64,000 bases of DNA from assembly GCA_001179505.1 (NCBI GenBank), contig CDMY01000391.1:25272-89271 (forward strand). Reading direction: 5' to 3'. Of the stretch, positions 15,404-64,000 are shown one piece after another; the stretch's first letter is position 1, and every line of letters starts with the position of its first letter. The translations under genes were made by a program, and so were the position numbers. The notes under the pieces were generated by a model that saw only the letters and a program-made list of their open reading frames with translations, was not told where the DNA came from and did not search any database. Origin of the DNA: Vitrella brassicaformis CCMP3155 (lineage: Eukaryota; Protista; Chromerida).

Positions 15404-17392
15404 TTAATGACGATTGGTGTGTGTCGCGTCAACGCTGCCATTCTCCTCCTCGGCTGATGCATCCTCACCTGTCATCAAGACACACACAATCACACACACA
15501 CACACACACACACACGTGTGATACGGATCGAGACAAGGGTATCTGTGGTGTTCTGTGTGTGCCTTCTTTCCTTCCCTCCTGTGTACCTCCGCTGCCGTGT
15601 TCGCTGTCGACATCCATCTCGTCACTCTCATTGCCACCATCACCGTCTGCACCACACACATAGAGAAGGCCCATTATCGATCCATTCACGCGAGTGTGTG
15701 CCCCTCCTTGCATCCCTCCCTGTCTCCCTGGCTCCCTCATCCCTCTGTCTGTCCGTCCACTCACCGCTATCGTCACCATCGTTATCGCCGTCACCCTCGT
15801 CGCTATCCTCTTCTGCCGATGTGGATTGACATTGAGGCATGTGTGTATACTGACTGTGTGTGCTTTCCTTCCTTCCTTCGTGCGTACCTCCGCTGCCGTC
15901 TCCATCGCTGTCGTCATCCATATCATCCCAACCGCCGCCATGACCGTCGGAATCTACACCACACACAAAGACAGAGAGAGAAGAAATGCCATTCATCCAT
16001 CCACACCATGGCCACCATATTTGTGTCCCTCCCCTGCCCGCACCGTTGTCATCGTCGCTGTCATCGTCTACTTGGCCGTCGAAGACGTATGGCGCCACTC
16101 GTCCCAGCGCCACACGGGCCAGCTGAGTGGTGACAGGGAAGCGGTCCTTGAAGGAACCGCTCACACACGGCACAGGTGCCTCGGTGGTCCAAACGTCAAC
16201 AAACACTGCAGACAATCAGACAGAAAACACTGATGGCATTTGATCACCACCTGAGCTGTCTGTCTGTCAGCCTGACCGTAGTCGTATCCCACATCCGAAA
16301 TGGCAATCCACGCGACGAAGTTGTGGCTGCTGTCGGTGAGCACCAACCGTCGCACACGCTCGTCCCGGCTGAGTGTGGTGGTGCATCCGGCCACCGGTGT
16401 GTGGGGCGACTGGGTCAGGAGGCCATCCAGGCGGCCGCCACCAACACGCCTGAACCAATCACACACGCCCCTCTTGCCACTGATGCCATTTGTGTGGTAC
16501 CTGTTGAGATATATGAATGTGCGATTGGTATGGTGAGTGTGGTGGAGGTGATCGAGGATCACACGCTTGGCAAATGACGACACCGACGAATCGGTGGACG
16601 AGTTACCGTACGACACCCATCTGCCGGTGTGGCCTCGTAGTCGATGCGGCTCCGCACTGGTGGGTCATGCTGTAGTCGGTGCCGCTGATACAGATGGCCG
16701 GCAGGGAGGGGAGGGTCGACGGTCAGCCGAAAACTAGGAAGGTCCCTGATGGCCCGCACCTCATCGTTGGCACGGCGGAAGATCTGCAGGCGGCTGCCGT
16801 CACCGAAGTCGATGTGGCGGCCGACCACCATCAGCTGCGCCAACACACGAGCTACCAACAGATACGCCTACACCACACAGACAGACAGACAGACAGACAG
16901 ACAGGCAGAGAGGAATGAGGTCTCTCCGCTCTCCCCCGCCCCTGTGTGTGTGTGCCTTACCGTCTTGCTGGCGTGTGTGCGAATGTCATCTGCCGTGAGG
17001 TTGACGGGCAGCGTGCAGCAGCCGCACTGGCTGGCCAGCTGCAGCACCTCAGCGACCTCGTCCCACCTCTGCTCTTCCATCATCCAGATGGCCGCCAGCA
17101 GCAGCTGCGCCCCGACCACCGACTGAGTGTCGAAGGCCAGCAGGGTGTCCAGTCGGGTGCCGTCAGCGAGGCGAATGCGATCCAGTGAGCGGTTGAGGCG
17201 ATGGCGGAGGACCTCGGCAGGGAAGTCGACCTTGCTGAAGAACAGGGCCGACTTTCTGATGTTGCCGAGGTCCTTGACGTTGTGCAGCTCATCGCGCTCG
17301 TCCCGATAGACGACGTCCAGGACCTGGCCGTTGATGGCGGGCGATGCCTCGTCGGTGCTCTTGATCTCGACCTTGCTCTTGACCGCACCCAT
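15404..17392 (-). CDS. Lineage-specific family member A, with MGAVKS N-terminus and acidic micro-exon tail
   Basis: Core motifs LTADDIRTHASKT|, RVLAQLMVVGRH, HDPPV, RLDGLLTQSPHTPVAGC and FKDRFPVTTQLARVALG, followed by four short Asp/Glu/Gly-rich exons. Confidence 0.8.
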
Positions 17393-19236
17393 CGCTTGTC
17401 GCAAAGGCTACTTTCTACGCCATCTCGTCATTGAAGCTCGCAATGAATCACGATCGAATTCATTGCTAGGGAGAGGAGAGAAGTGCAAATGGATGCGAGT
17501 GCAATGAGGTGTGTGGGGAAGCCAATCGTTGTTTGGCTTGAAGAAGGAGTGATTGAGTTTTGAGTGAGTGAGTGTGTACTCATTTGTGTGCATCGATGTC
17601 GACTATTCACCACACGGACATATGAGCAATATAATGCAATACAATGCAATGCTCACACACACACGTCTGTCAGTCCATCCATCAACACAGACAGGCAGAC
17701 AGGCCAATACACACACATGGACTACACACAGAGAGGAGAGAGCGCGACCGATATCAGCCATTCATCCAAAGAGAGAGGGAGGGGGAAAGCCAACGGTCGT
17801 CAGCCATTCCACCGACATGCGTGGCCCCCCTGTGACTGAGTGAGTGAATGAGTGCGTCCCGCGCCACACTCATCCATGGCCACGCAGGCAGGCAACACAC
17901 ACACTCATACACAGATAAAGAGAGAGGCCATTCGATGTGTACACATGTCAGTAACTATGTCACCATATGTATACGGACGTACATATGTGTGTGTACATAT
18001 TTATGTATAGGTGTGTACAGAGATCGAGGGATACAGAGAGGGGGGAGAGAGGGGAGGCAGCCGACGTAAGGCAATTAGGCAGCACAGGTGGACCAACGAT
18101 CGCGACACATGCGCCACATGTCGCGTACCGCCGTCCCACCACCATGCACCACCACCACCACCACCACGAGTAAGTCAGGAGGGCTGGGGCGGATCACTCC
18201 AGTGTGTATGGCTGCGTATACATGACCGAGTGCCATGCAGCAGCCGCACACGAGATGAACTCAGGAAGCCGCCCACAGCCCCAGGGAACCAACAAGGAGG
18301 CAAAGACAACTGACTGCATCGGAGCAGCCTGTCTGTCTGTTTGTCTGTCTGTCTGTGCGTCTGTCTGGTCCAGTGTTGTGAATGGATGGACCACGACTGT
18401 GAAGCACACGCTGCCACGTATGTGTGATGCGTGTGTGTGGAGCAAACAATGCGCCGCAGATGGATCAATGGATGGATGGATGGATGGACACACCATACAA
18501 GAGTGTGTGGTGCGTCGACCGGTCTGTCTGTCTGTCTGTCTGGGTTCAGGCAGACAGACAGACATGTGTGTACCCATTCAGAGAGAGAGGAGATGTCAAT
18601 CATCAGCCCAACAAAAGCACCGGCCGCCCAGCCATGCAGACGGAGAGGAGTGAGGGGCAAAACAGATAGACACGGCAGCGCAGCCAAGGAGTGTGTGTGT
18701 GTGTGTGTGTATTGATTTCTGTCCACCGACACGTGCGCATCAGTCAGTCCATCCACAGACACACACACACACACAGACACAGCCAGGCAGTCAATACCGC
18801 TCACACAGACACAGCCAGGCAGTCATTTTCCATGTGGTTCACCCAGGCAGGTAGTCAGGCCGGCAGCCAGGCACACACATTGCGGCCGAGCCGTGAGGTC
18901 AAAACCGGCCAGCAGTGAAGGGCAACACACCAACCACAGCCAGGCAGGAAGCCACCCAGATAGGTACATATCAACAGAGAGGGCGAGAGAGGGAGGGATA
19001 TGCAGAGAGGCTGGACGGCGCAACGCAGACAGGTCGCCCACCCACAGCCATTGGGCCAGTCATGTGTCAGCAGCTGGTCTCTCTACAGAGTGGGCGGTAT
19101 ACGATCTCTCTCTATCACAGACAGCCATAAGTCGATTCGGGCAGCCAGCAGCCACTGACAGCACTGCAAACACTCTGCTCCAGCGCACTGTGGTGTGCGC
19201 GAGTACCTGTGGTGGTCCCGTATTGAGTTGGGTTGA

Positions 19237-22060
19237 TCAGTCGCCGCTCTCCTCCTCAGCTGAGGCATTGTCACCCGTCATGCAGACACACAGAGACCTG
19301 GATGTGATGCGGGTCGATGTGAGTCTATCTGTCGTCCGCTGTGTGCCTCTCCCCCTCGTGTGTACCTCCGCCGCCCTCTCCGTCGCTGTCGTCGTCCATA
19401 TCATCTCAACCGCCGCCATGGCCGTCGGAACCTACACCACACACACACACAGACAGAGAAGAAATGCCATCCATCCATCCACACTATGGCCACCATATGT
19501 GTGTCCCTCCCTCCCTCCCTCCCTCCCTCCCCCCCCTGTCCGCACTGTCATCATCGTCGCTGTCATCGTCCACTTGGCCGTTGAAGACGTATGGCGCCAC
19601 ATCTGACCCCAGCGCCACACGGGCCAGCTGAGTGGTCACCGGGAAGCGGTCCTTAAAGGCACCACTTACACACACAGGCGCCTCGGTCGTCACAATCCAA
19701 ACCCTCACTGCAGACAACCAGACAGAAATCACATGAAATTTGACCAGCGGAGCTGCCTGTCTGTCAGCCTGACCATTGTCGTTTCCATTATCCAGAATGA
19801 AAATCCATGCGACGAATGTGTGGCTTTCGTCGGTGATCACCAGGCATCGCACACGACCGTCCCGGCTGCTGAGTGTGGTGGTGCATCCGGCCACCGGTGA
19901 GTGGGGCGACTGGGTCAGGAGGCCATCAGACGGCCGCCACCAACACGCCTGAACCAACCACACACATACACACACACAATCACACACGCACCCCTCTCAC
20001 CCACTGGTGCCATTGATGTGTTACCTGTTGAGGAGTATTCCTGTGCGATTGATCTGGTGAGTCTTGAGGAAGTGGTTCATTACCATGCCCTTAGCGAAGG
20101 ACCACACCGAGGAATCGGTGCACGGGAGACCGTCCGACTCCCATGTGCCGATGGCGCCCAAGTAGTTGATGCGGCTCTCCACTGGGGGGTCATGCTCCAG
20201 TCGGTGCTGCTGATACAGATGGTGGGCAGCGAGGGGCGGGTCGACGGTCAGCCGGAAGCCGGGCTCGTCCTTGATGGCCCGCACCTCACCATTGGCACGG
20301 CGGAAGATCTGCAGGCAGCTGCGGTCACCGAAGTCGACGTGGCGGCCGGCCACCATGAGCTGCGCCAACACACGAGCTACCGACAGATACGCCTACACCA
20401 TACAGACAGACAGAGAGGGAATGCACGAGGCCTCTCCGGTCTCTCCCACCCCTCTGTGTGTGTGTGCATGTCTTACCGTCTTGCTGGCGTGTGTGCGAAT
20501 GTCATCTGCCATGAGGATGACAGGCAGTGTGCAGTAGCGGTACTGGCTGGCCCACTGCAGCACCTCCCTCGTCTCATCCCACCGCCCGCCCTCCTCGGCG
20601 ATCCACACCGCCGCCATGAGCTCACCCATCCCCAGCGATGGGTCGAACTGCACCAGCTGCAGCTGCTGAGTGTTGATGCCATCTCCGTCACGGCTCAGCG
20701 AGTGGTCGAGGCGGTTGCGCAGCTGGGCAGATGAGAAGGCTTTTCTGAAGCATGGTGCGGTGGCCCTCAGCTGAAGTGTGGTGCTGATGTCGGGGATGCA
20801 GCATCGGTCGTCGACGAAGAAATGGGCAAGGGGATGGTCCTTGTTGCTATCCTGCAGACGGCACACACACACGTCAAGGCACATCTGGCGCATTTCGGTC
20901 GGCTGTGTCACGCCCACCTGCTGCTGCTGCTGCTGCTGAGGGTGGTTGTGGACCGCGGGTTGCTCGGATGAGGGTCGTCGCCAACACCATGACCACACAC
21001 GGCAGCAGATGTGCCACATGAGCACCATCCACCACACAGACACCTACATAATGGGAACCATCGCAACACTCACTCTTCAAGTCAGTTGTGTCACACCCAC
21101 CTGCTGGTGCGGGTAGCTGTGCGTCGATGCGACGCTGTGGCGATCGGGCGAGGCGAACAACTCATCCACTGCATCCGTCACTAACTGGACGAAGGACACA
21201 AACGACACACAATGAAACCACCGCGTTGGTCATTCTGCTATTCTTATGACATGGTCACCCCTTTGGTGGTCTGTGTGTCGCGCCACAGCAGCCGCAGCAT
21301 CCTCAGGGTCGCTATGCCAGACTCCAACGCCGCCTCGCTAAACGAACTCTCAGCCACAAGGGCCGCACTCTGACGGACATTGACCCCCCCAGGCCATCAC
21401 ACACATCGTCGCACATCATGACACGTGGTGCTCCTTCGGCTGACCCAAATGCGGCCCGCTATCTGGTCCTGGTTGGCCTTGCGTGTGATGTAGACGGCCG
21501 TGGCGGCCAGCAGGCGGACATCGCACCCGGCCAAATCGACGTCACACATCGAGAGAAACTGTGGACAAACACACAAAAGGGCAAGGACAGACATGGATAA
21601 GCCATTCGATGGCTGGAGGTGTCTGTGTGTGGCTAACGGACCGGCTTACCATGAGGTATTTGGCGACTGAGAACAGGCGGCCGTGGGTGTCCATGCCGGC
21701 GGCAGTGAAGAGCCTCTCCAGACACTCCAGCCCGCAGTCAGATCTATCGGCCATCGCTCGGCCCACCAGCTGCACACACAGACAGCCGAACAAATGTCCG
21801 GTGTGCCTGTCTGTGTGTGTGACGTCAAAGCACCCGGGTGTATGTCGGCTGAATGGGCACATCAGCGACACTGACCAGCCGCACCGCCCGCATGACCGTC
21901 GTGTCGCCGCAGCCAATCCGTGACGCCCTCCCAACTAACTGGTTCACCCAGACGGCTGCACCACCAGACACACACACACACAGGAACACATCAGAAATGG
22001 ATTTGTGAATCGTTCGTGTGTCGTCCGGGTGGGCGGACCTCTCCGCTGCGGCCACTTCAT
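19237..22060 (-). CDS. Family member B: partially deleted cyclin-like N-terminus plus family core
   Basis: MKWPQRR|AVWVNQLVGRASRIGCGDTTVMRAVRL...AKYLM|FLSMCDVDLAGCDVRLLAATAVYITRK, then DHPLAHFFVDD...LQLRATAPCFRKAF and the shared core. Confidence 0.75.
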
Positions 22061-24007: not shown

Positions 24008-25773
24008 TAGCCGCTGCGCCACACCATGCCGCTCCCACGATGCCGTACTACGCGCACCCGAAGATGGCGAGTAGGGTGGACCCCAGGCAGGGACTACTTT
24101 CCGCGGCGACGGCTGCAGCACTGTGGGGCCAACAGCACCCACACCATCAGTACCACCAGCAGCGACAGCACGAGCAGCTTGGTGGGATGAAGATGCAGGA
24201 ACCGCACCATCAGCAGCATCAGCAGCATCCCTTCTCATACATCTTCGTTGGTCGCCGCACCTTCTACCTCCTCAGCCTCACAGACATCCTGCGGCTGAGG
24301 GCCACCTGCACGTGGCTCAGGTGTCTCTTCCGAGCGCCCCAGCTGAGAGTTCGGCTCCGCCACTCTGTCGGCTCACAGGCGGGGCTGCGGCGGCTGGTCA
24401 ATGGACAGCAGGTGCAGCTGGTGCGGTTCGACGACGACCACTTCGGCGTGTGTGATCTGCTGGCGGCTGTGTGTGTGATGGAGGAGGGGGACTGGATGGA
24501 GATGGGCGAGGTGATTGAGCTGGCGGGGCAGTGCGGCCACTGTGACCTGCCCGTCATCCTCACAGCCGATGACATTCGCACACACGCCAGCAAGACGGTA
24601 AGGCACACACAGAGGGGCGGGAGAGAACAGAGAGGCCTCATCCCCTCTCTGTCTGTCTGTCTGTGGTGTGGTGTAGGCGTATAGATCGGTAGCTCGTGTG
24701 TTGGCGCAGCTGATGGTGGTCGGCCGCCACGTGGCCTTCGGTGACGGCAGCTGCCTGCAGATCTTCCGCCATGGCAATGGTGAGGTGCGGGCCATCAGGG
24801 ACGAGCCCTTCTTCCGGCTGCAGGTCAACCCGCCCCTCCCCGCCCACCATCTCTATCAGCAGCATCGACAGCCACACGACCCACCAGTGAACGGCGGCTT
24901 CATCTACTCGGACGGATGGGGGCCGACCGGTCTCCCGTACACCGATGCGTCGGTGTCGTCGTTTGCTAAGGACATGGTCCTCAACCACTTCAGCGAGACT
25001 CACCAGACCAATCGCACATCGAGTGACCTTGACAGGTAACACACTCCAATGGCACCAGTGGGTGAGAGGGGTGCGTGTTTGATTGTGTGTGTGTGTGTGT
25101 GTGGTTGGTTCAGGCGTGTTGGTGGCGGCCGTCTGGATGGCCTCCTCACACAATCGCCCCACACACCGGTGGCCGGATGCACCACCACACTCAGCTACGA
25201 CGGTGATTTCCGATGGCTGGTGCTCACCGCCGGCAGCCACAACTTCGTCGCATGGATTTCCATCACCGGATTAGTAAACAACGATGGGAAGGGAGACAGA
25301 GAGGCAGCTCTGCTGGTTAAGTGTCGCGTTCTCTTCTTCCCCTTGTGTGCAGTGGGTGTGCGTGTCGAGACCACTGAGGCGCCTGTGTGTGCGAGTGGTC
25401 CCTTCAAAGACCGCTTCCCTCTCACCACTCAGCTGGCCCGTGTGGCGCTGGGAGCGGTGGCGCCATACGTCTTCGACGGACAAGTACAGCAGCAGCAGCA
25501 GCAGCAGGATGACGACAACGGTACGGACACACACATGGATGGATGGATGGATGGATGACGTGCCTTCCCTCTCTGTGTGTGTGGTCTGCAGATTCCGAGG
25601 ATGGTGCTGATGAGGGTGATACGAATGACGGCAGCGGAGAAGGCGACGGAGGTACACAGCCACACGCACCACAGAGGACCTCACATTGGCCTGAATGACT
25701 TTCATTTGTGTGTGTGTGTCCTGTGCACTCGACAGGCGAGGGTGGCGTAGCTGAGGCGGAGAGCGGCAACTGA
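24004..25773 (+). CDS. Family member C, with a Gln/His-rich N-terminus
   Basis: HPFSYIFVGRRTFYLLSLTDILRLRATCTWLRCLF (F-box-like), then the shared core and acidic tail exons. Confidence 0.8.
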
Positions 25774-26155
25774 TCCATCCGTCAATACTGGTGAGCTCGC
25801 AGCGATTCACTTAGGCCATGTGGCTGATGTTGCCCTGATGAGTGTGCGTCTGTGTGTGTCATCAGGAGGGTGTTGGTTGCGTGCCGGCTGTCGTCATCTC
25901 TGCAGGCGATCCATGTGTGTGCACGATGGATGAATCGCATATCGCTCACTCTGCAGACATACAGACCAGCTGCTGATATGTGACCGAATGGCAGCTGTGT
26001 GGGTGTTGTGCTGAAGAGTTCCATGCCTCTCTGATGCATGCGTTGCATGAATGAATCGGCCCGTGCGTCCCTATTCTGTATGCGCAGCCCTTTGCGCAGC
26101 GACGCTCGCGATAGTGGCGGGGCCGGGAGAGGGAGAGGGAGAGATGGACGGCCAG

Positions 26156-55410: not shown

Positions 55411-58106
55411 ATGAAATGGCCGCAGCAGAGAGGTTCGCCCGACTCGCACACACCAACACACAACAGATGCCCTCAGAGGTGTGCTGTGCTGTCTGTGATG
55501 TGTTGCAGCCGTGTTGGTGGACGGGATCGTCAAGAGAGCAGCGTCGATGGGCTGCCGCGACGCGACCGTCATGCGGGCGGTGCGGCTGCTGGACCTGTGC
55601 CATACCGATGGAATCATCGACACGGACAACGCCACACAGGCAAAGAGATCTGAATGACAGACAGAGAGTAAGGACTCGTGGGATGTGTGTGTCACTTGGC
55701 TGGCTGCTGACACGCAGGTAGCAGTTGCGTGTGTGGCCGCCTGCGTCAAGCGGCTGGAGCCACACCTGCTGATGGACGACATGCCTGATGACCCTTCCCA
55801 CACACGGGCACAGGTATTGAAACACAGACACAGACACGCACACGACGCTCACCTGTGCAGCGCCGACCTGTTTGTCTGTCTGTTTGTTTGTTTGGCTCTG
55901 TGTGTGCAGGTGGTGGGTCGTGCGGCGGCTGATAGTTCTGTGTGCGGCATTGGGTGTCTGGAGAAGCTGTTCACTGATGCCGGCATGGACACCCACGGCC
56001 GCCTGTTCTCAGTCGCCAAATACCTCATGGTAAGCCGGTCGGCCACTCAGACACAGACACCTGCAGCCGTCGAATGGCTTATCCATGTCTGTCTGTGCCC
56101 TTTGTGTGTCCACAGTTTCTGTCGATGTGTGAAGTCGAGTTGGCCGGGTGCGATGTCCGTCTGCTGGCCGCCACGGCCGTCTACATCACACGCAAGAACC
56201 ACCAGGACCAAATAAGGGGCCGCATATGGGTGGGCCAGAGCGGCACGTGTCATGATGTGTGTATGTGTGATGGCCTGGGTGGGTCAATGTCCGTCAGAGT
56301 GCGGCCCTTGTGGCTGAGAGTTCGGTTAGCGAGGCGGCGTTGGAGTCTGCCATAGCGACGCTGAGGATGCAGCGGCTGCTGTGGCGCGACACACAGACCA
56401 CCAAAGGGGTGAGGGACACACCAGCACACAATGTGCGTGTCACTGTGTGTCCTTTGTGTGTAATTGTGTGTGCAGATAGTCACGGATGCAGTGGACGAGA
56501 TGTTCGCCTCGGCCGACCGCCACGGCGTTGCGTTGACACACAGCCACCCGCAGCAAGAGCGCCAGCAGCAGGTGGGTGTGACACAGCCGACCGACCGAAA
56601 TGCGCCAGATGTGCCTTGACGTGTGTGTGCCGTCTGCAGGATGGCAACAAGGACCATCCCCTCGCCCATTTCTTTGTCGACGACCGGTGCTGCATCCCCG
56701 ACATCAGCACCACGCTCCAGCTGAGGGCAGCCGCACCATGCTTCAGAAAAGCCTTCTCACCAACGCAGCTACGCAACCGCCTCCACCACTCGATAGCCCG
56801 TGAAGGCATCGACACTCAGCTGGTGCAGTTCGACACATCGCTGGGAATGGGTGAGCTGATGGCGGCGGTGTGGATCGCCGAGGAGGGCGGGCGGTGGGCT
56901 GAGACGAGGGAGGTGCTGCAGTGGGCCAGCCAGTGCCGCTACTGTACACTGCCCATCATGCTCACGGCAGATGACATCAACACACACGCCAGCAAGACGG
57001 TAAGGCACACACAGAGGGGCGGGAGAGAACAGAGAGGCCTCATCCCCTCTCTGTCTGTCTGTCTGTCTGTCTGTGGTGTGGTGTAGGCGTATGGATTGTT
57101 AGCTCGTGTGTTGGCGCAGCTCATGGTGGTCGGCCGCCACGTGGCCTTCGGTGACGGCAGCTGCCTGCAGATCTTCCGCCATGCCAATGGTGAGGTGCGG
57201 GCCATCAAGGACGAGCCCGGCTTTCGGCTGACCGTCAACCCGGTCATCCCCGCCCACCAGCTGTATCAGCAGCATCGCCTACAGCATGACCCACCAGTGG
57301 AAAGCCGCATCGAATACTGGGCCATCGACGGCAGATGGGTGTCGAGCTTCCCGTTCGAATATCCGTCGGTGTCGTCGTTTGCCAAGGACATGATCCTCAG
57401 CCACTTCGCCTTCACTCACCAGATCAATCGCACATCGATACGACTCAACAGGTAACACATCAATGGCACCAGTGGCGAGAGGGGTGCGTGTTCGATTGTG
57501 TGTGTGTGTGTGGTTCAGGTATGTCGGTGGCGGCCGCCTGGATGGCCTCCTCACCCAATCGCCCCACACACAGGTGGCCGGATGCACAACGACATACAGC
57601 TGGGACGGTCGTGTGCTAGACCTGGTGCTCACCGATAGCAGCCACAACTTCGTCGCATGGATTCCCCTTGAGGATATGGGAAACGACAATGGTCAGCCCG
57701 ACAGACAGACAGCTCTGCTCGTCAAATGTTATTAGTGTTATCTGTCATTGTCCACAGTGTTGGTTAGTGTCGAGACCAGTGAGGCGGCCGTATGTGGGAG
57801 TGGTGCCTTCAAGGACCGCTACCCCGTCACCATTCAGCTAGCGCGTGTGGCGCTGGGGCGAGTGGCGCCATACGTCTTCGACGGCCAAGTAGAATGATGA
57901 TGACGGTAGGGACACGCACAAACACAGGCCGGATGGACGGCACGACGTGGCTTGTGTTGTGTGTGGTTGTGTGTTTGTGTGTCGTGTTAGGTTCCGACGA
58001 TGGCAGCGATGATGAGGGCAGTGCAGGTACCAAAGAGAGAGGGAGGGAAGGCACACAGCACACAAGTGTGTCCCTCCTTGTGCACTCGACAGGTGACGGT
58101 GTCTGA
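55411..58106 (+). CDS. Family member D: degenerate cyclin fold plus F-box-like motif plus family core
   Basis: MKWPQQR|AVLVDGIVKRAASMGCRDATVMRAVRLLD...Q|VAVACVAACVK...AKYLM|FLSMCEVELAGCDVRLLAATAVYITRK is spliced in phase through helical linker exons to DGNKDHPLAHFFVDD and the core. Confidence 0.78.
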
Positions 58107-58693
58107 TTGAGCAGTCAACTACCACTGGTACGCCACAGAAATGCCACGCGCGAAGCCGATGAATGTCTTCGGTCATCCAATTGCGTTGTGTGTGCACAGG
58201 CCGAATGGTGGTCGGTGTACCACTCACTCACTCTGGATCTTGGATGGTCAGGGGTTACCATATGCCTCTGATGCCGTCACGTCAGTTAGGCTATGGCTTT
58301 GCTTTTTGTCCGTGCGTCTCTCCCTCCCCCTCTATGTGTGTGTGTCTGTCTGTGTGAATAGAGATCTTCTCGTCCTCATGGCTGGCTGGCTGGCTGGCTG
58401 GCTGTGGGTGGGTGGGCCTGTGGGTGCGCTGAGTGCTCTTCACTGCTGCAGTGGCCGATTTTGATGTGATGCTGCGGGGTGTGTGAGTGTGTTTGGCTGC
58501 CTGGTCGGGCCACTCGCAACCAATCAATGCATGTGTGTGTGCTGATGGAGACCTCTCTCTCAATGATTGTGCGCCTGAGTGTCCAACACTGTCCCACACC
58601 CCCAGAACGTGGGTCCAGGATTTCAAACCCTCCTCCCCCTCCCTCCCCTTCAGTAGATCTTCCTCCGCCGGCGTGGCTCTTCATCTTCTGCAG

Positions 58694-60281
58694 ATGCAGC
58701 AACAGCAACATCAGGAGCAACAGCATCCCTTCGCGTACATCTTCCTCGGCCGCCTCACGTGGTATCTTCTCAGCATCGTCGACGTCGTGCAGCTCAGAGC
58801 CACCTGCACATGGCTCAGGGGTCTCTTCGGAGCGCCCCAGCTGAGAGATCGGCTCCGCCACTCTGTCGGCTCACAGGCGGGGCCGCGGCGGGCGGTGAAT
58901 GGGCAGCAGGTGCAGCTGCTGCGGTTCGACGACGACCAGTTCGGCGTGCGGGATCTGCTGGCGGCTGTGTGTGTGATGGAGGAGGGGAGCTGGGTGGAGA
59001 TCGGTGTGGTCATTGAGCTGGCGGGGCAGTGCGGCTACTGTGAGCTGCCTGTCATCCTCACATCCGATGACATCAACACACACGCCAACAAAACGGTGAG
59101 CCAGCAAACAGAGGGGCGGGGAGGGGACAGTGAGGCCTCATTCCCTCTCTCCCTGTGTGTGTGTAGGCGTATATGTCGGCTCCGCGTGTGTTTGCACAGC
59201 TCATGGTGGTTGGCCGCCACGTCAAGTTCAGTGACAACAGCTGCCTGCAGATCTTCCGCCATGCCAATGGTGAGGTGCGGGCTATCAAGGACGAGCCCGG
59301 GTTCCAGCTGGACATCGACCCGCCCCTCCTCGTCGGCCATCTGTATCAGCGGAACCGACTAGAGCATGACCCGCCAGTGCGCAGCGGCATCAACTACAAT
59401 GGCGGCAGATGGGTGTCGAGCTTCATCCCGTTCGAGTATCCGTCGATGTCATCGTTTGCCAAGCGTGTGATCCTCCGCCACTTCCCTCAGACTCACCAGA
59501 TCAATAGCACATTGACTACACTCCACAGGTACCAACCACATCTACGGCACCAATGGGCGAGAGCGGTGCGTGTCTGATTGTGTGTGTGTGTGTGTGTTTG
59601 GTTGGTTTAGGCGTGTTGGTGGCGGCCGTCTGGATGGCCTCCTCACCCAGTCGCCCCACACACCGGTGGCCGGATGCACCATCACATTCAGCCGGGACGG
59701 TCGTGTGCGATGGCTGGTGCTCACCAACAGCAGCCACACCTTCGTGGCATGGATTCTCATTGAGGATCAGACCGATAATGGTCAGGCCGACAGACAGGCA
59801 GCTCTGGTCGTGATCGAATGCCATGTGATGGTCTCTCTGTCATTGTCTGCAGCGTGGGTTGACGTCGTGACGACCGAGGTGCCCCTGGCGGGTGTCAGTG
59901 AGAATGCGCCTTTCAAGGACCGCTTCCTCGTCACCACTCAGCTGGCCCGTGTGGCGTTGGGGGCGGTGGCGCCATACGTCTTCGACGGACAAGTACAGCA
60001 GCAGCAACAGGATGACGATAGCGACGATGGTATGCACACACACACATTGGTGGACGGATGGACGATGTTCCTTCACTTCTGTGTGGTGCAGACGGCCATG
60101 GTGGTGGCTGGGATGATATGGACGACGACAGCGAGGGCGAGGACAGCGGAGGTACGCAGCCACACACAGCACACGCATACCCGCACGTCGGCCTGCGTCA
60201 CATTCAGGTGTGTGTGTGTGTGTGTGTCCTGTGCACTCGACAGGTGAGGATGCCGCAGCTGAGGAGGAGAGCGGCGACTGA
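58694..60281 (+). CDS. Family member E, tandem to D, with a Gln-rich N-terminus (closest to C)
   Basis: HPFAYIFLGRLTWYLLSIVDVVQLRATCTWLRGLF, shared core and acidic tail ...GEDAAAEEESGD*. Confidence 0.8.
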
Positions 60282-60859
60282 TCGATCCATCAGTCAGTAC
60301 CGGTGGCTGAGTGTGGGTGTCTGCCGTCAGGAGGGTATCTTTAGCTGCTGGCTTTCGTCATTCATCTCTGTAGCCAATCTGCTCACTCTGTCGACCAGCT
60401 GCTCATTGATGTGTCACTTACCGAATGTCTGGCATGGCTCTGATGCTTGCGTGAGTCGGTCTATGGCTTCGCCTTCTTCTCCGTGGGTCTCTCTTCTCAG
60501 CTATGTGTGGCCCTCTCCCTCCCTCCCTCGCTTCGTCTCTATCTGTGTCTGTCTGTCGGTGTGGTTCGATTCGCTGCTGGCCGATTTTGATGTGATGCTC
60601 CGGCCGGTGTGTGGCTTTGGTTGGTTGCCTGGCTGACTCACCTGCCTGCCTGCCATAACTCTCTCGAGATGACTGTGTGATGGAGTGTGTCTCTCGGCGT
60701 GTGCACACGATGGCCGTGAAGTGACATGTGTTCATGTGGTTGTTCAGATCTTTCCTGTCAACGACTGTTAAGTGATCGCAGAGTGAGCTCTGTCGTGGGC
60801 GAAGCTACTCTGGGGGGCTAAGCTCGCAGACCCGAATGTAAATCTCCTCGTTCAGCTGC

Positions 60860-62104
60860 ATGCCCCTTCTCCGTCGCTTCTCGCCGTTTCATTTGCCTTC
60901 CCATCTCCGCCGGCGGGTGATGGTGGCTTTATCAATGCAGACGGGCGTCATCATCTCCGCCTCTCGTCATCACCAGTTTGCCGTCAATGCGTCCCTCTCT
61001 CCCTTCACCACGGCAACTCGACAACTTTCTTCAAGGAATGCTGACGCCCTTCTGCGATGGGAGGATGAAGGAATGGGCGAGGCCGCCGCTGCAGAGCGCC
61101 GGCGGAAGATGGAGTGGAGGCTCATCGGCAACTCGGGCGTGCAGTGTGTGATGGATCTGCTGAGGCGATGGTTTGAGGTGCAGAGGACCTGGGAGATGGC
61201 CCAGGCTGACCTCGCTGTGCGGCCTTTGGGCGTGGATGAAGATGTGTGGCTGCCAGTGCAAGTCAAGACCAGCAAGGAGAAAATAACCCGTTTCTGGTTC
61301 TTCGGCCGTGTTCACCATTACGCCGACATGCCCGTCATCTGTGTGGCTCTTTCGGACCTCCGCATCTGGTGCTACAGCGGATCCGTACTGCAGCAACGAC
61401 TTACATATGGGAAACTCAGCGTGTATGAGAATGGGCGGTGGAACCATGAGAGCTTCCGGTGCTCAAGGGCCCTTGAGGGCCCGGCATCTCTGTCGCACAA
61501 GCTGCTGGTGGCCTATCAGGACCCCTCGTTCACCAAGGACTCGCTGGCGAACATCATGCTGCAGCGGTCCGAGACGCAGCAGAAAGGCCAGGAATCCGTT
61601 GCCGCATGGGCTGACCTACTATCTGCTGCTGACGTGGAGGTCCGTCAGCAGCTCATCTACGAGATGACGCCTGTCGATGCTGTTTGGTGGTGGAATAAGA
61701 AGCGATTCCCCATTCAGCACAAACAGGCTTTCCTTCACCATTGCAACAACGGCTCATATCATGTCGTCCTTTAGAAGAGCGCCGGCAGGAAGGGAGGACG
61801 CTATACATGGCAGCTGTACGATGAAGGAGACTTTGATCTGCTCGCTGTTTCTCTGCCTGGTGGCCGCTATGCCTATCTCATTCCCATGAGGAGGCTAATG
61901 GAGCGTCGGCTGGTGAATGGACCGACGGACAGGCGTCAGTGCAGTAGTGCGTCAGTGATACTTTGGACGCCCGAGGAGATGCAGAAACGACGGGGCCACA
62001 GAGCTGACTTTTGGGCGAGCACGCACATGATTGACGCACATACAGCAGATGGCGGGGTGGGGAGGCTGCACGCTATCCTTGAGGGTGCCAGGTGCTCTAA
62101 ATGA
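60860..62104 (+). CDS. Putative tandem PD-(D/E)XK (QxK-type) nuclease with a mitochondrial-like presequence, interrupted by an in-frame TAG at 61772
   Basis: Motif 1: ADLAVR...LPVQVKT. Motif 2: VDAV...PIQHKQ...YHVVL*K..GR...YDEGDFDLLAV...YLIP. The reading frame continues unchanged past the TAG. No introns. Confidence 0.6.
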
Positions 62105-62172
62105 CATGGTATGACACATTCGTGCCTGTGTGCATGCGTCTCGGTCAATGATTGCGTGTGTGGTTTTTCAAG

Positions 62173-62399
62173 GGACAAAGAGGGGGCGTCCCATACAACA
62201 GCTGTACGACGAGGGAGGCTTTGATCTGCTGGCCGTCTCGCTGCCTATTGATCGCTATTTCTATGTCACTCCCATGAAAGTGCTGGTGCAAAGGGGCCTC
62301 GCAAATAGCAGGACAGACGTGCGCATGCTGTTTGTGAGCACGGGATGTGCTCGACATAACACGATGATTGGATCTGTGCGTGCGTCGGATTGGATGAAG
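62173..62399 (+). other. Duplicated C-terminal segment of the nuclease gene, as a candidate exon
   Basis: GTKRGRPIQQLYDEGGFDLLAVSLPIDRYFYVTPM parallels KSAGRKGGRYTWQLYDEGDFDLLAVSLPGGRYAYLIPM. Flanked by a TTTTTCAAG acceptor and a GTATGT donor. Confidence 0.6.
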
Positions 62400-62661: not shown

Positions 62662-63792
62662 CTATCCATGTTCTGTCTGCCCTCCACTCTCATCATCACT
62701 GTCGCTGTCGCTCTCCGCCCCTGGCTCTTCATTCTCCTCTGACCACACCTTGCTGCCCAACTCACCCCCACAGACACCCATCACCGCACCACGTGTCCGT
62801 GTGTATGGACACTCTTCGGTCGTGTGCACTTGAATGCCCACCGATCCGTACACACGCCGACCGTCATTTAGCTCTAGATACACCACAACAACCGCCGCCA
62901 CCTCAGTGTCCGCCAGCAGCACATATCGGCTGTGCCAGGTGGGCTCCGTCTCGGTCTTGGCATCGAAAACGTGACACCCCTCAACTGGCCCGGCAGGCGA
63001 TTCCGTCAGCAAGGCCACGCACCGACGATAGCAGGACGATTCAGACAACAAGGACCGCCACGTCTTGCAACGGCTGCGGAGCCGCTCATCAGCCCGCAGC
63101 AGGCAGTCGCCGACCATGCAGCTCAGTGAGCGGAACGTCACTCGAAACTGAGGATACCGTGCCGACGGGTTATGCGGGTCGAATGCGTCAAGAAAAGGGG
63201 CATAGGGGATCGTCCGCAGCTGGAAGGGGTGGAAGCCACTGCTCGTGAAGTCAGCCAGCCGATCATTGCCCTCCAGCAGCCGCTGGCCGTCAACCACCGC
63301 TTCCCTACCAATCACACTCAGCTGTCTCATGGCCTCTGGGGCGGTCAGGAATGACTGCCGCCCTGCCCTTCTGCTGACATGGTCGAAACTCGCCTCACCC
63401 AGCACCAGTGGCTCGCCGCGGAGCAACCGCATGACCACCAGATGCGGCCGCCATCTGACCCACTCGCCGCCATGCTCCAGCACAAACAGCCGCCTCAGCA
63501 CACGGGGCAGCTCGTCAGACACGCTCAGCCACGCCGCCCCGTCGCTGCGGCTGCGCCGATGGTGGGGGCCCTCGATGGCCGCCACACGCAGCAGCTCAGC
63601 GCCGAGGTTCATGTGAGTGTCGATAGCCTTTGAGAGGCGGCTGGTGAAGTAGGCACCATCGATTGGGTGCTCTGTGGCGACAATGAAGTCGGTCTTGACC
63701 AGCCGGAGGGTCAAGGCGTCATCGGTGTCCAGCAGGTCGGCCAGCAGCGGATGTAGAGAGGAGGGGATGCCGGAAATGGGGGAGGCGGCCAT
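62662..63792 (-). CDS. Intronless, divergent family member F
   Basis: LLDTDDALTLRLV (F-box-like), FDPHNP (cf. HDPP), RCVALLTESPAGPVEGC (cf. RLDGLLTQSPHTPVAGC), RYVLL (cf. RWLVL) and HTTEE (cf. TTEAP), with an acidic C-terminus. Confidence 0.7.
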   Translation of the reverse strand: MAASPISGIPSSLHPLLADLLDTDDALTLRLVKTDFIVATEHPIDGAYFTSRLSKAIDTHMNLGAELLRVAAIEGPHHRRSRSDGAAWLSVSDELPRVLRRLFVLEHGGEWVRWRPHLVVMRLLRGEPLVLGEASFDHVSRRAGRQSFLTAPEAMRQLSVIGREAVVDGQRLLEGNDRLADFTSSGFHPFQLRTIPYAPFLDAFDPHNPSARYPQFRVTFRSLSCMVGDCLLRADERLRSRCKTWRSLLSESSCYRRCVALLTESPAGPVEGCHVFDAKTETEPTWHSRYVLLADTEVAAVVVVYLELNDGRRVYGSVGIQVHTTEECPYTRTRGAVMGVCGGELGSKVWSEENEEPGAESDSDSDDESGGQTEHG

Positions 63793-64000
63793 GGGAAGAT
63801 GGAGTCGAAAAACGCGGAGACCTCTTTTCGAAAGGGCTAGGGGACTGTTTCTGTAGCCTGCGAGGGACAAAAGTGTAAGAATAGGTGGGAGAGAGTCGGG
63901 GAGAATGGTGAAGAGAGGATCTGCCGGGCGGTCAGTCCCGGATAAAGGATTAAGTCAATGCAACGTAAGGTCTGTGGATTTTGTGGAGAGTCCACGTAGG

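What the first reader, a model, noticed from the sequence alone, without database searches (positions are those of the whole stretch)
60860..62104. Putative mitochondrion-targeted tandem PD-(D/E)XK nuclease with an internal amber codon
Seen: the first ~60 aa are R/S/H-rich with no acidic residue. Two D...QxK motifs follow (ADLAVR...VQVKT and VDAV...IQHKQ), and the second ends in Y...DFDLLAV...YLIP. The gene is intronless, and the frame runs on for ~110 codons past TAG 61772. Established: this motif set resembles the PDDEXK_5 / I-Ssp6803I-type endonucleases of mobile introns and viruses, and myzozoan mitochondrial genomes are reduced and fragmented. Inference: a domesticated or horizontally acquired nuclease acting on organellar DNA or RNA, now disabled or read through.
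Basis: partly seen in the sequence, partly recalled or inferred. Interest (0 to 1): 0.7.

Follow-up and report, generated by a model that had tools for sequence, protein, structure and literature searches.

The report
Broken copy of giant-virus-type double nuclease
This intronless nuclear gene of the alga Vitrella brassicaformis encodes a protein of two restriction-enzyme-like domains behind an organelle-import-like leader. It belongs to an unnamed family shared with related protists and giant viruses, but this copy is cut short by one young stop codon, and four of its five sister copies are broken too.

Summary
ORF 60860-61774 ends at TAG 61772, and the frame stays open for 109 more codons. 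The whole 414-codon reading is colinear with an intact 427-aa paralogue, P0002, of Vitrella brassicaformis.

The fold claim also holds. A confident model of P0002 (pLDDT 92.9) matches homing endonuclease I-Ssp6803I with domain 2 (Z 15.7). Domain 1 matches SPARDA, NhoI and EcoRV-type nuclease domains (Z 9-10). The two domains are homologous, and each keeps D...QxK. No Pfam model reaches threshold, so the family is unnamed. It has two branches: a leader-bearing one in Vitrella, Chromera and Alphamonas, and a larger zinc-ribbon one in giant viruses.

The TAG is an ordinary, young nonsense mutation, not a recoded codon:
- Paralogues have R, H or Q at that site.
- Three sister copies carry private stops (TGA, TAA, TAG), and two carry frameshifts.
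- The part after the TAG is as constrained as the rest.
- A marine-sediment contig, 98% identical, reads TCG there, though at low depth.

Mitochondrial import is plausible: there is no acidic residue in 61 aa and a conserved RxL-S end. It was not tested.

This scan already found the family on two other pieces of this genome (s1-205579, s1-205618). This window adds a broken member.

The parts
60860..61042 (+). N-terminal leader, aa 1-61. It has no D or E and is rich in R, S, H, T and A. It ends in RQLSS (61019-61033).
   Evidence: Composition. The leader type and the RRL[LFS][ST] end are shared with Vitrella paralogues and two Alphamonas members, whereas viral-type members have a Cys-rich zinc ribbon instead.
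61037..61500 (+). Domain 1 (about aa 60-214), restriction-endonuclease-like. D at ADLAV 61205-61219 and QxK at VQVKT 61256-61270. The helix-1 Glu of the family is Gly here (GNSGVQ 61127-61144).
   Evidence: In the model of paralogue P0002, residues 1-151 match SPARDA nuclease domains at Z 10.2 and NhoI at Z 9.1, plus EcoRV and PvuII.
61541..61771 (+). First half of domain 2 (helix, strands 1-3). D at VDAV 61673-61684 and QxK at IQHKQ 61712-61726.
   Evidence: Family profile against I-Ssp6803I (2ost) E 9.1e-7 and MepB (4lqe) E 4.4e-7. Fold match Z 15.7, rmsd 2.8 A, 146 of 148 residues.
61772..61774 (+). Premature TAG, in the loop between the QxK strand and the next core strand of domain 2.
   Evidence: Paralogues have R, H, H or Q here, with CAG in L002. 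The TAG stands in the X4 DNA contig, and the X10 metagenome contig reads TCG.
61775..62104 (+). Open continuation, 109 codons plus TGA: the second half of domain 2 and the C-terminal helices. DFDLLAV 61829-61849, YLIP 61874-61885.
   Evidence: It is colinear with P0002 to the shared end GVGRLHAILEGA. dN/dS is 0.27-0.39. It keeps 7 of 11 family-conserved residues, against 6 of 11 in the intact copy.
62172..62399 (+). Relic fragment of another copy's domain-2 core (YDEGGFDLLAVSLP...YFYVTP).
   Evidence: Direct repeat D3, 70% over 125 nt. tblastn against P0002 residues 306-364, E 8e-11. It is 90% identical to the L003 copy and 81% to the adjacent copy.

Best explanation
Window 60860-62104 is one nuclear, intronless paralogue of an unnamed protein family. 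In this family two homologous I-Ssp6803I-like PD-(D/E)XK domains sit in tandem as a built-in pseudo-dimer. The family has a cellular branch (Vitrella, Chromera, Alphamonas and small metagenome contigs), many of whose members carry an Arg/Ser-rich, acid-free leader, and a larger giant-virus branch with an N-terminal zinc ribbon.

In the sequenced strain this copy is a young null allele. A single nonsense mutation (TAG 61772) ends translation inside domain 2, before two core strands and the C-terminal helices. At best, the leader plus domain 1 and a domain-2 stump that cannot fold are made.

Shown: the family membership, the fold of both domains, the stop in DNA, and private lesions in four sister copies.

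Inferred: the intact members are imported into an organelle, more likely the mitochondrion. There they bind or cut DNA as dimers of pseudo-dimers, as the I-Ssp6803I tetramer does. The family turns over by birth and death.
For: - Family and organism: one search finds Vitrella paralogues at 53-64% identity. In one search the TAG lies where paralogues have R, H, H or Q, and the frame after it aligns to the shared C-terminus.
- Lesions: of the six full-length copies recovered, only L001/P0002 is intact. L003 has a TGA, L004 a TAA, L005 a TAG plus a frameshift, and L002 a 2-nt frameshift.
- Age of the lesion: pairwise dN/dS is 0.29-0.53, and 0.27-0.39 downstream of the window's TAG. One stop is expected per about 2% neutral divergence, against dS of 0.36-0.98 between copies. 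The window keeps 23 of 36 family-conserved residues, the same as the intact copy.
- Reads: the TAG is in a DNA contig of the organism, and TCG is in a 98%-identical environmental contig that also has a synonymous change at 61825.
- Fold: model pLDDT 92.9. Foldseek against 2ost E 2.9e-7. VIA Z 15.7 for domain 2 and Z 9-10 for domain 1.
- Sequence profiles: family profile against 2ost 9.1e-7 and 4lqe 4.4e-7. hhalign of domain 1 against domain 2 gives E 6.8e-5 with the motifs in register.
- Range of the family: 569 relatives, named from Vitrella, Chromera and Alphamonas. Viral look-alikes are, and a 156-kb gene-dense contig.
- Tree: a 23 to 76 split between members without and with a zinc ribbon, SH-aLRT 95.
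- Leader.
- I-Ssp6803I works as a tetramer in which two subunits touch the DNA (PMC3384342).
Against: - No RNA or protein data were laid on the gene, so neither expression nor read-through is excluded.
- The DNA run that confirms the TAG may be the assembly's own data. Two other runs of the organism have no contig across 61730-62173.
- The TCG allele rests on one contig at depth 2.6.
- The fold was predicted for the 59%-identical paralogue, not for the window's own broken protein.
- The helix-1 Glu that over 80% of the family keeps is absent, as aligned, from both domains in the Vitrella group. Even intact members may therefore bind rather than cut.
- Targeting was not tested with any predictor.
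- Five of six copies being broken at about the same recent time is unexplained.
Confidence: 0.72

Rival explanations
1. The gene is functional as a full-length protein because the TAG is read through or suppressed, keeping the dose of a dangerous nuclease low.
For: The frame after the TAG is perfectly open and as conserved as the rest. Three sister copies also carry single in-frame stops in otherwise intact frames.
Against: The stops are of all three kinds (TAG, TGA, TAA, TAG) and lie at unrelated positions. Two copies have frameshifts instead. That is the pattern of random lesions, not of a signal. Paralogues and the environmental contig have sense codons at this site. No known read-through context is evident.
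Confidence: 0.07
2. The truncated 304-aa product (leader, domain 1 and half of domain 2) is itself the working protein, a single-domain derivative.
For: Domain 1 is complete, with its D and QxK. The public gene model ends at the TAG (P0001).
Against: The truncation removes core strands of domain 2 (DFDLLAV, YLIP), leaving a stump of about 75 aa that cannot fold alone (secondary structure). The discarded part shows purifying selection, so the truncation is recent. No intact member of the family ends here.
Confidence: 0.08
3. The family is a selfish, mobile, free-standing homing-endonuclease-type gene, or a processed retrocopy family. It spreads through the nuclear genome and decays after each insertion. 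The leader is incidental.
For: The copies are dispersed and intronless among ordinary host genes. Similarity between copies stops about 56 nt upstream of the ATG and at the stop codon. Most copies are broken, each by private lesions. A relic fragment lies next to the gene and is closer to a distant copy. The nearest solved relative is a homing endonuclease.
Against: The acid-free leader with its RRL-S end is conserved between Vitrella and Alphamonas members, which argues for a host function. No target-site or intron context, terminal repeats or poly(A) remnants were seen. Copies differ by dS of 0.4-1.0, so there has been no recent burst.
Confidence: 0.15
4. The TAG is an assembly or sequencing error, or a mutation of the culture line only, and the gene is intact in nature.
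For: An environmental contig, 98% identical, reads TCG. Two runs of the organism have no contig over the site.
Against: A DNA contig of the organism reproduces the TAG with no differences over 397 nt. Four sister copies show lesions of the same kind, so errors would have to be frequent in this family alone. A mutation confined to the strain is compatible with the best explanation.
Confidence: 0.08

Closest known systems
I-Ssp6803I (PDB 2ost), group I intron homing endonuclease of Synechocystis; Pfam PF11645 PDDEXK_5
   Same: Restriction-endonuclease core with D on strand 2 and QxK on strand 3 (I-Ssp6803I itself reads QVK). Domain 2 of the family superposes over 146 of 148 residues (Z 15.7, rmsd 2.8 A). 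The family profile scores E 9.1e-7 against it.
   Different: I-Ssp6803I is a 150-aa single domain that forms a homotetramer and is encoded inside a tRNA intron. Here two diverged domains are fused in one chain of about 415 aa, the gene is free-standing and nuclear, and it carries an import-like leader. No window piece or homologue reaches the Pfam gathering score.
Unnamed two-domain proteins of Nucleocytoviricota (for example A0A076FH51 of Aureococcus anophagefferens virus, A0A1V0SIJ8 of Klosneuvirus, A0A3G5A8P9 of Hyperionvirus)
   Same: The same two-domain architecture over the full length: Foldseek E 3e-15 to 3e-16 with TMq 0.64-0.66, and Atlas TM 0.59-0.66 over 305-334 residues. Both domains share the invariant D, Q and K.
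   Different: The viral branch has an N-terminal Cys-rich zinc ribbon and keeps the helix-1 Glu. The Vitrella group has an acid-free leader and lacks that Glu as aligned. Sequence identity is about 20%.
MepB (PDB 4lqe, Staphylococcus aureus)
   Same: Domain 2 plus the C-terminal extension matches by profile (E 4.4e-7) and by fold (Z 10.7).
   Different: MepB is a single-domain bacterial protein of unknown function with no tandem partner.
[quoted passage not shown]
   Same: The same core fold: Hjc with domain 2 (Z 8-8.6) and the SPARDA DNase domain with domain 1 (Z 9-10).
   Different: This is fold-level likeness only. There is no sequence-level match and no Argonaute partner. Junction specificity was not tested.

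Membership tests
PD-(D/E)XK (restriction-endonuclease-like) superfamily | Alpha-beta-beta-beta-alpha-beta core fold | tested here: met
   The model of the 59%-identical paralogue has pLDDT 92.9. All top PDB matches have this fold, for both domains. The window's own protein was not folded, because of the stop.
PD-(D/E)XK (restriction-endonuclease-like) superfamily | Acidic residue on strand 2 and (D/E/Q)xK on strand 3 | tested here: met
   The window has D (ADLAV) with QVK, and D (VDAV) with QHK. These columns are 95-99% conserved in 95 distant relatives.
PD-(D/E)XK (restriction-endonuclease-like) superfamily | A second acidic metal ligand (the helix-1 Glu in this branch) | tested here: inconclusive
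   The family columns E18 and E172 read G and G in the window and S and G in P0002. A Glu lies one or two residues later in domain 2, and E40 is kept in domain 1. Alignment register was not checked in three dimensions.
PD-(D/E)XK (restriction-endonuclease-like) superfamily | Metal-dependent nuclease activity | not testable with these tools
   Needs an in vitro assay of an intact paralogue.
Pfam PF11645 PDDEXK_5 / I-Ssp6803I homing endonucleases | Score above the Pfam gathering threshold (26.1 bits) | tested here: not met
   No hit at E up to 1 for any window piece. Three homologues score 19.7-20.8 bits.
Pfam PF11645 PDDEXK_5 / I-Ssp6803I homing endonucleases | Significant similarity to I-Ssp6803I itself | tested here: met
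   Family profile E 9.1e-7, Foldseek E 2.9e-7, Z 15.7. Atlas PDDEXK_5 clusters score TM 0.54-0.77 normalised by the cluster model.
Pfam PF11645 PDDEXK_5 / I-Ssp6803I homing endonucleases | Encoded within a mobile intron or intein, with homing | tested here: not met
   The gene is free-standing between host genes. No intron context was found in the window or in five paralogous loci.
Unnamed NCLDV/chrompodellid double-domain family | Two tandem homologous domains, each with invariant D...QxK, colinear over about 350 residues | tested here: met
   Alignments; hhalign of domain 1 against domain 2 E 6.8e-5; 569 HMM hits; in the tree the window groups with Vitrella copies at 99-100 support.
Unnamed NCLDV/chrompodellid double-domain family | N-terminal zinc ribbon (viral branch) | tested here: not met
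   The window and the other cellular members have no Cys pairs at the N-terminus. The window and many of them have an acid-free leader instead.
Mitochondrial presequence | Arg-rich, acid-free N-terminus with an R-2/R-3 type cleavage motif | tested here: met
   There is no D or E in 61 aa and there are 8 Arg. RQLSS / RRL[LFS][ST] lies at the end of the leader in Vitrella and Alphamonas members. This is composition only.
Mitochondrial presequence | Positive call by a trained predictor, or observed localisation | not testable with these tools
   No TargetP or MitoFates was available. A moderately hydrophobic stretch at aa 20-34 leaves a bipartite plastid leader possible.
Pseudogene / null allele | A disabling lesion present in genomic DNA at a site that is sense in relatives | tested here: met
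   The X4 contig carries the TAG. Paralogues have R, H or Q. The environmental contig has TCG (low depth).
Pseudogene / null allele | No full-length product made | not tested
   None of the listed runs that hold the stretch is on record as RNA, and the single reads call was used on contigs.

The most novel reading that the evidence does not exclude
Chrompodellid algae and their predatory relatives domesticated a giant-virus-type, built-in pseudo-dimer of homing-endonuclease-like domains by swapping its zinc ribbon for a mitochondrial presequence. The intact members cut or resolve the fragmented linear mitochondrial DNA of these organisms. The family evolves by rapid birth and death, so the TAG here is a segregating null allele that is still a sense codon (TCG) in wild populations.
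Probability: 0.15. Interest if true: 0.75.

Novelty: new variant of a known kind. Interest (0 to 1): 0.4.

Why it matters
The fold and chemistry are classical, those of restriction and homing endonucleases. The packaging is not described in any paper I could find. Two diverged I-Ssp6803I-like domains are fused in one chain, shared between giant viruses and the closest photosynthetic and predatory relatives of apicomplexan parasites. In many of the cellular members a zinc ribbon is replaced by an organelle-type leader.

If the intact members act in mitochondria, they are candidates for making or maintaining the fragmented mitochondrial genomes of this lineage, whose enzymology is unknown.

This particular copy matters less. 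It is a young pseudogene or null allele. It shows that the family is decaying in the sequenced strain, and that public gene models hide the lesions behind spurious introns.

Tried and rejected
- Direct family scans of the window pieces and of P0002 found nothing in Pfam or NCBIfam. The only hit was an unnamed PHROG at 4e-6.
- The profile of the eight Vitrella rows against PDB sequences gave only chance hits.
- The first AlphaFold run, with that shallow alignment, was unusable (pLDDT 40). It worked only after the library-wide HMM search gave 95 distant relatives.
- An intron that removes the TAG was rejected. The acceptor-like tttAG is preceded by in-frame conserved coding sequence, the only nearby GT leaves 12 nt, and no joint at this locus appears in the contigs. 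The 82-nt and 470-nt joints belong to contigs with 6-8 mismatches, that is, to paralogues.
- Codon reassignment was rejected because all three stop types occur among the copies.
- The downstream relic as an alternative exon was rejected. It is closer to another copy (L003), and no supporting joint from this locus exists.
- An endogenous giant-virus island was rejected. The neighbours of all copies are ordinary host genes.
- X1 and X3 were not read as RNA. Their contig totals fit genome-sized DNA, and they cover the intergenic DNA upstream.
- The original I-Ssp6803I structure paper is not held, so its catalytic residue numbers are not quoted.

Full report
**What is there.** The window comes from Vitrella brassicaformis CCMP3155; its closest protein matches are named so. 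An ORF runs on the + strand from ATG 60860, the first start after the in-frame stop at 60839. It covers 304 codons to TAG 61772-61774. The same frame then stays open for 109 more codons to TGA 62102-62104. The leader has no acidic residue until D62 and holds 8 Arg, 4 His and 9 Ser.

**It is a real gene with a real break.**
- A word-based search found five Vitrella paralogues at 53-64% identity.
- One of them, P0002 (427 aa, single exon), is colinear with the window's reading across the TAG, right to the shared C-terminus GVGRLHAILEGA (tblastn 1e-153 in one frame).
- At the TAG position the paralogues have R, H, H and Q, with CAG in the L002 copy.
- In the contigs of public runs, one DNA run of the organism reproduces the TAG over 397 nt with no differences. 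That run may be the assembly's own data.
- A marine-sediment metagenome from a different study holds a contig covering 61682-61870 with three differences. One turns TAG into TCG (Ser), and another, at 61825, is synonymous. Its depth is only 2.6.
- Two further runs of the organism have no contig across 61730-62173, which proves nothing.

**The whole family is breaking.** I fetched the loci of all five paralogues and read them in frame.
- Only L001/P0002 is intact.
- L003 has a TGA where the others have W or Y.
- L004 has a TAA where the others have Q.
- L005 has a TAG where the others have E, plus a frameshift.
- L002 has a 2-nt deletion.
- The published models P0003, P0005 and P0006 jump over these lesions with 'introns' that delete catalytic motifs. 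P0001 and P0004 simply end at the stop.
- The stops are of all three types and lie at unrelated sites, so a recoded codon or a read-through signal is unlikely.

**The lesions are young.**
- The copies differ by 18-29% at the nucleotide level.
- Pairwise dN/dS is 0.29-0.53. Downstream of the window's TAG it is 0.27-0.39, no weaker than upstream.
- The window keeps 23 of 36 family-conserved residues, exactly as the intact copy does.
- In this ORF one stop is expected per about 2% of neutral divergence, against dS of 0.36-0.98 between copies.
- Why five of six copies broke at about the same late time is unexplained.

**What the protein is.**
- Pfam, NCBIfam and a shallow profile gave nothing. An unnamed PHROG matched domain 2 at 4e-6.
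- An HMM search of 1.84 billion representatives found 569 relatives.
- With 95 of them in the alignment, the invariant columns are D, Q-x-K in the first half and E, D, Q-x-K, Y in the second.
- That profile hits I-Ssp6803I (2ost, 9.1e-7) and MepB (4lqe, 4.4e-7) with domain 2.
- hhalign of the two halves against each other gives E 6.8e-5 with helix Glu, D, QxK and Y in register, so the halves are homologous.
- AlphaFold on P0002:76-427 with this alignment gave pLDDT 92.9 and pTM 0.87.
- Foldseek's best PDB hits are 2ost (E 2.9e-7) and 4lqe, then SPARDA, EcoRV and Hjc.
- VIA-align places I-Ssp6803I on residues 165-352 (Z 15.7, rmsd 2.8 A, 146 of 148). It places SPARDA DNase domains, NhoI, Eco15I, EcoRV and PvuII on residues 1-151 (Z 9-10).
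- Both domains therefore have the restriction-endonuclease fold.

**Who else has it.**
- Named relatives come from Vitrella (also P0007 and P0105), Chromera velia (several, some 650-1044 aa with 3-6 domains) and transcripts of the colpodellid Alphamonas edax.
- Full-length structural look-alikes are uncharacterised proteins of Aureococcus anophagefferens virus, Klosneuvirus and Hyperionvirus, and three Nucleocytoviricota clusters of the ESM Atlas.
- One zinc-ribbon member sits on a gene-dense 156-kb contig with UDG, dUTPase, kinase and RING genes.
- In an unrooted tree of 99 members, 76 are separated by a branch with SH-aLRT 95 from the other 23. Nearly all of the 76 carry Cys pairs of a zinc ribbon at the N-terminus, and nearly all of the 23 carry none. 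The 23 hold every named cellular sequence. The link between virus and host is real, but its direction is open.

**The leader.**
- Acid-free leaders of 36-76 residues occur in the Vitrella group and in Alphamonas.
- In the Vitrella group, including P0007, and in two of the three Alphamonas members the leader ends in RRL[LFS][ST]. The window reads RQLSS at 61019-61033.
- By general knowledge this resembles R-2/R-3 cleavage sites of the mitochondrial processing peptidase.
- A moderately hydrophobic stretch at aa 20-34 means a bipartite plastid leader cannot be excluded.
- No predictor was available, so targeting stays an inference. My estimate is about 55-60% mitochondrial.

**How it probably works.** I-Ssp6803I acts as a tetramer in which two subunits contact the DNA and two hold the assembly together (PMC3384342). 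A chain with two such domains is a ready-made dimer, and two chains would rebuild the tetramer. That is inference. In the Vitrella group the helix-1 Glu kept by over 80% of the family is missing, as aligned, from both domains, so catalytic competence is uncertain even for the intact copy. For this window's copy, translation should stop before the DFDLLAV and YLIP strands. It is most likely a null allele.

**Surroundings.**
- A 230-nt open relic of the same domain lies at 62172-62399. It is closer to the L003 copy (90%) than to its neighbour (81%).
- Similarity between copies ends about 56 nt upstream of the ATG and at the stop codon.
- The neighbours of all copies are ordinary host genes, so there is no viral island.

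**Earlier work.** The scan found this family twice before on other pieces of this genome (s1-205618, s1-205579). The verdicts there were the same: a giant-virus-type double restriction-fold nuclease, a leader in place of the zinc finger, and sister copies recently broken. I reached these points independently here before reading those notes in full, and I tested each of them.

**Verdict.** The gene is a young, broken member of an undescribed variant of a known nuclease kind.

Noticed in passing
window 62172-62399 (+): An open 76-codon relic of the domain-2 core of the nuclease family lies 70 nt after the gene's stop. It is 90% identical to the distant L003 copy but only 81% to the adjacent copy, which hints at ectopic recombination or a partial insertion rather than a local tandem duplication.
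   Followed up: partly
window 56300-58100 and 58480-60250 (+); also 15442-15968, 19229-19437, 25497-25784; L001 16921-17209, L002 14188-14848, L004 2548-3202: A tandem pair with a period of about 2.1 kb belongs to an abundant lineage-specific gene family, the one another note calls cyclin/F-box-like. A conserved element of about 150 nt follows its 3' end (window 60545-60691). Members lie within a few kb of several nuclease copies, which may only reflect how abundant the family is.
   Followed up: partly
L002 8001-9210, L003 4001-5427, L005 4001-4978 (GCA_001179505.1): The public gene models of three paralogues (P0005, P0003, P0006) contain 'introns' that sit exactly over a frameshift or an in-frame stop and delete catalytic motifs. 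These look like annotation artefacts that hide pseudogenes.
   Followed up: yes
proteins P0008-P0015, P0017, P0019 (Chromera velia where named): These are very long members (650-1044 aa) with three to six matched stretches. They are either arrays of the nuclease domain or fused models of tandem genes.
   Followed up: no
window 61730-62173: Two runs of the organism with word depth of 10-60 elsewhere have no contig over this stretch, while a third run and a metagenome do. The cause is unknown; it could be a filter, a graph tangle with paralogues, or a polymorphism.
   Followed up: no
window 60800-60851 vs L003 3886-3940: Similarity between nuclease copies stops about 56 nt upstream of the ATG, and there is none after the stop codon, although synonymous divergence (0.44) should leave the flanks alignable. 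The duplicated unit is therefore almost exactly the ORF.
   Followed up: partly
window 62662-63870 (-): A 402-codon ORF on the opposite strand converges on the nuclease gene. It was not examined.
   Followed up: no
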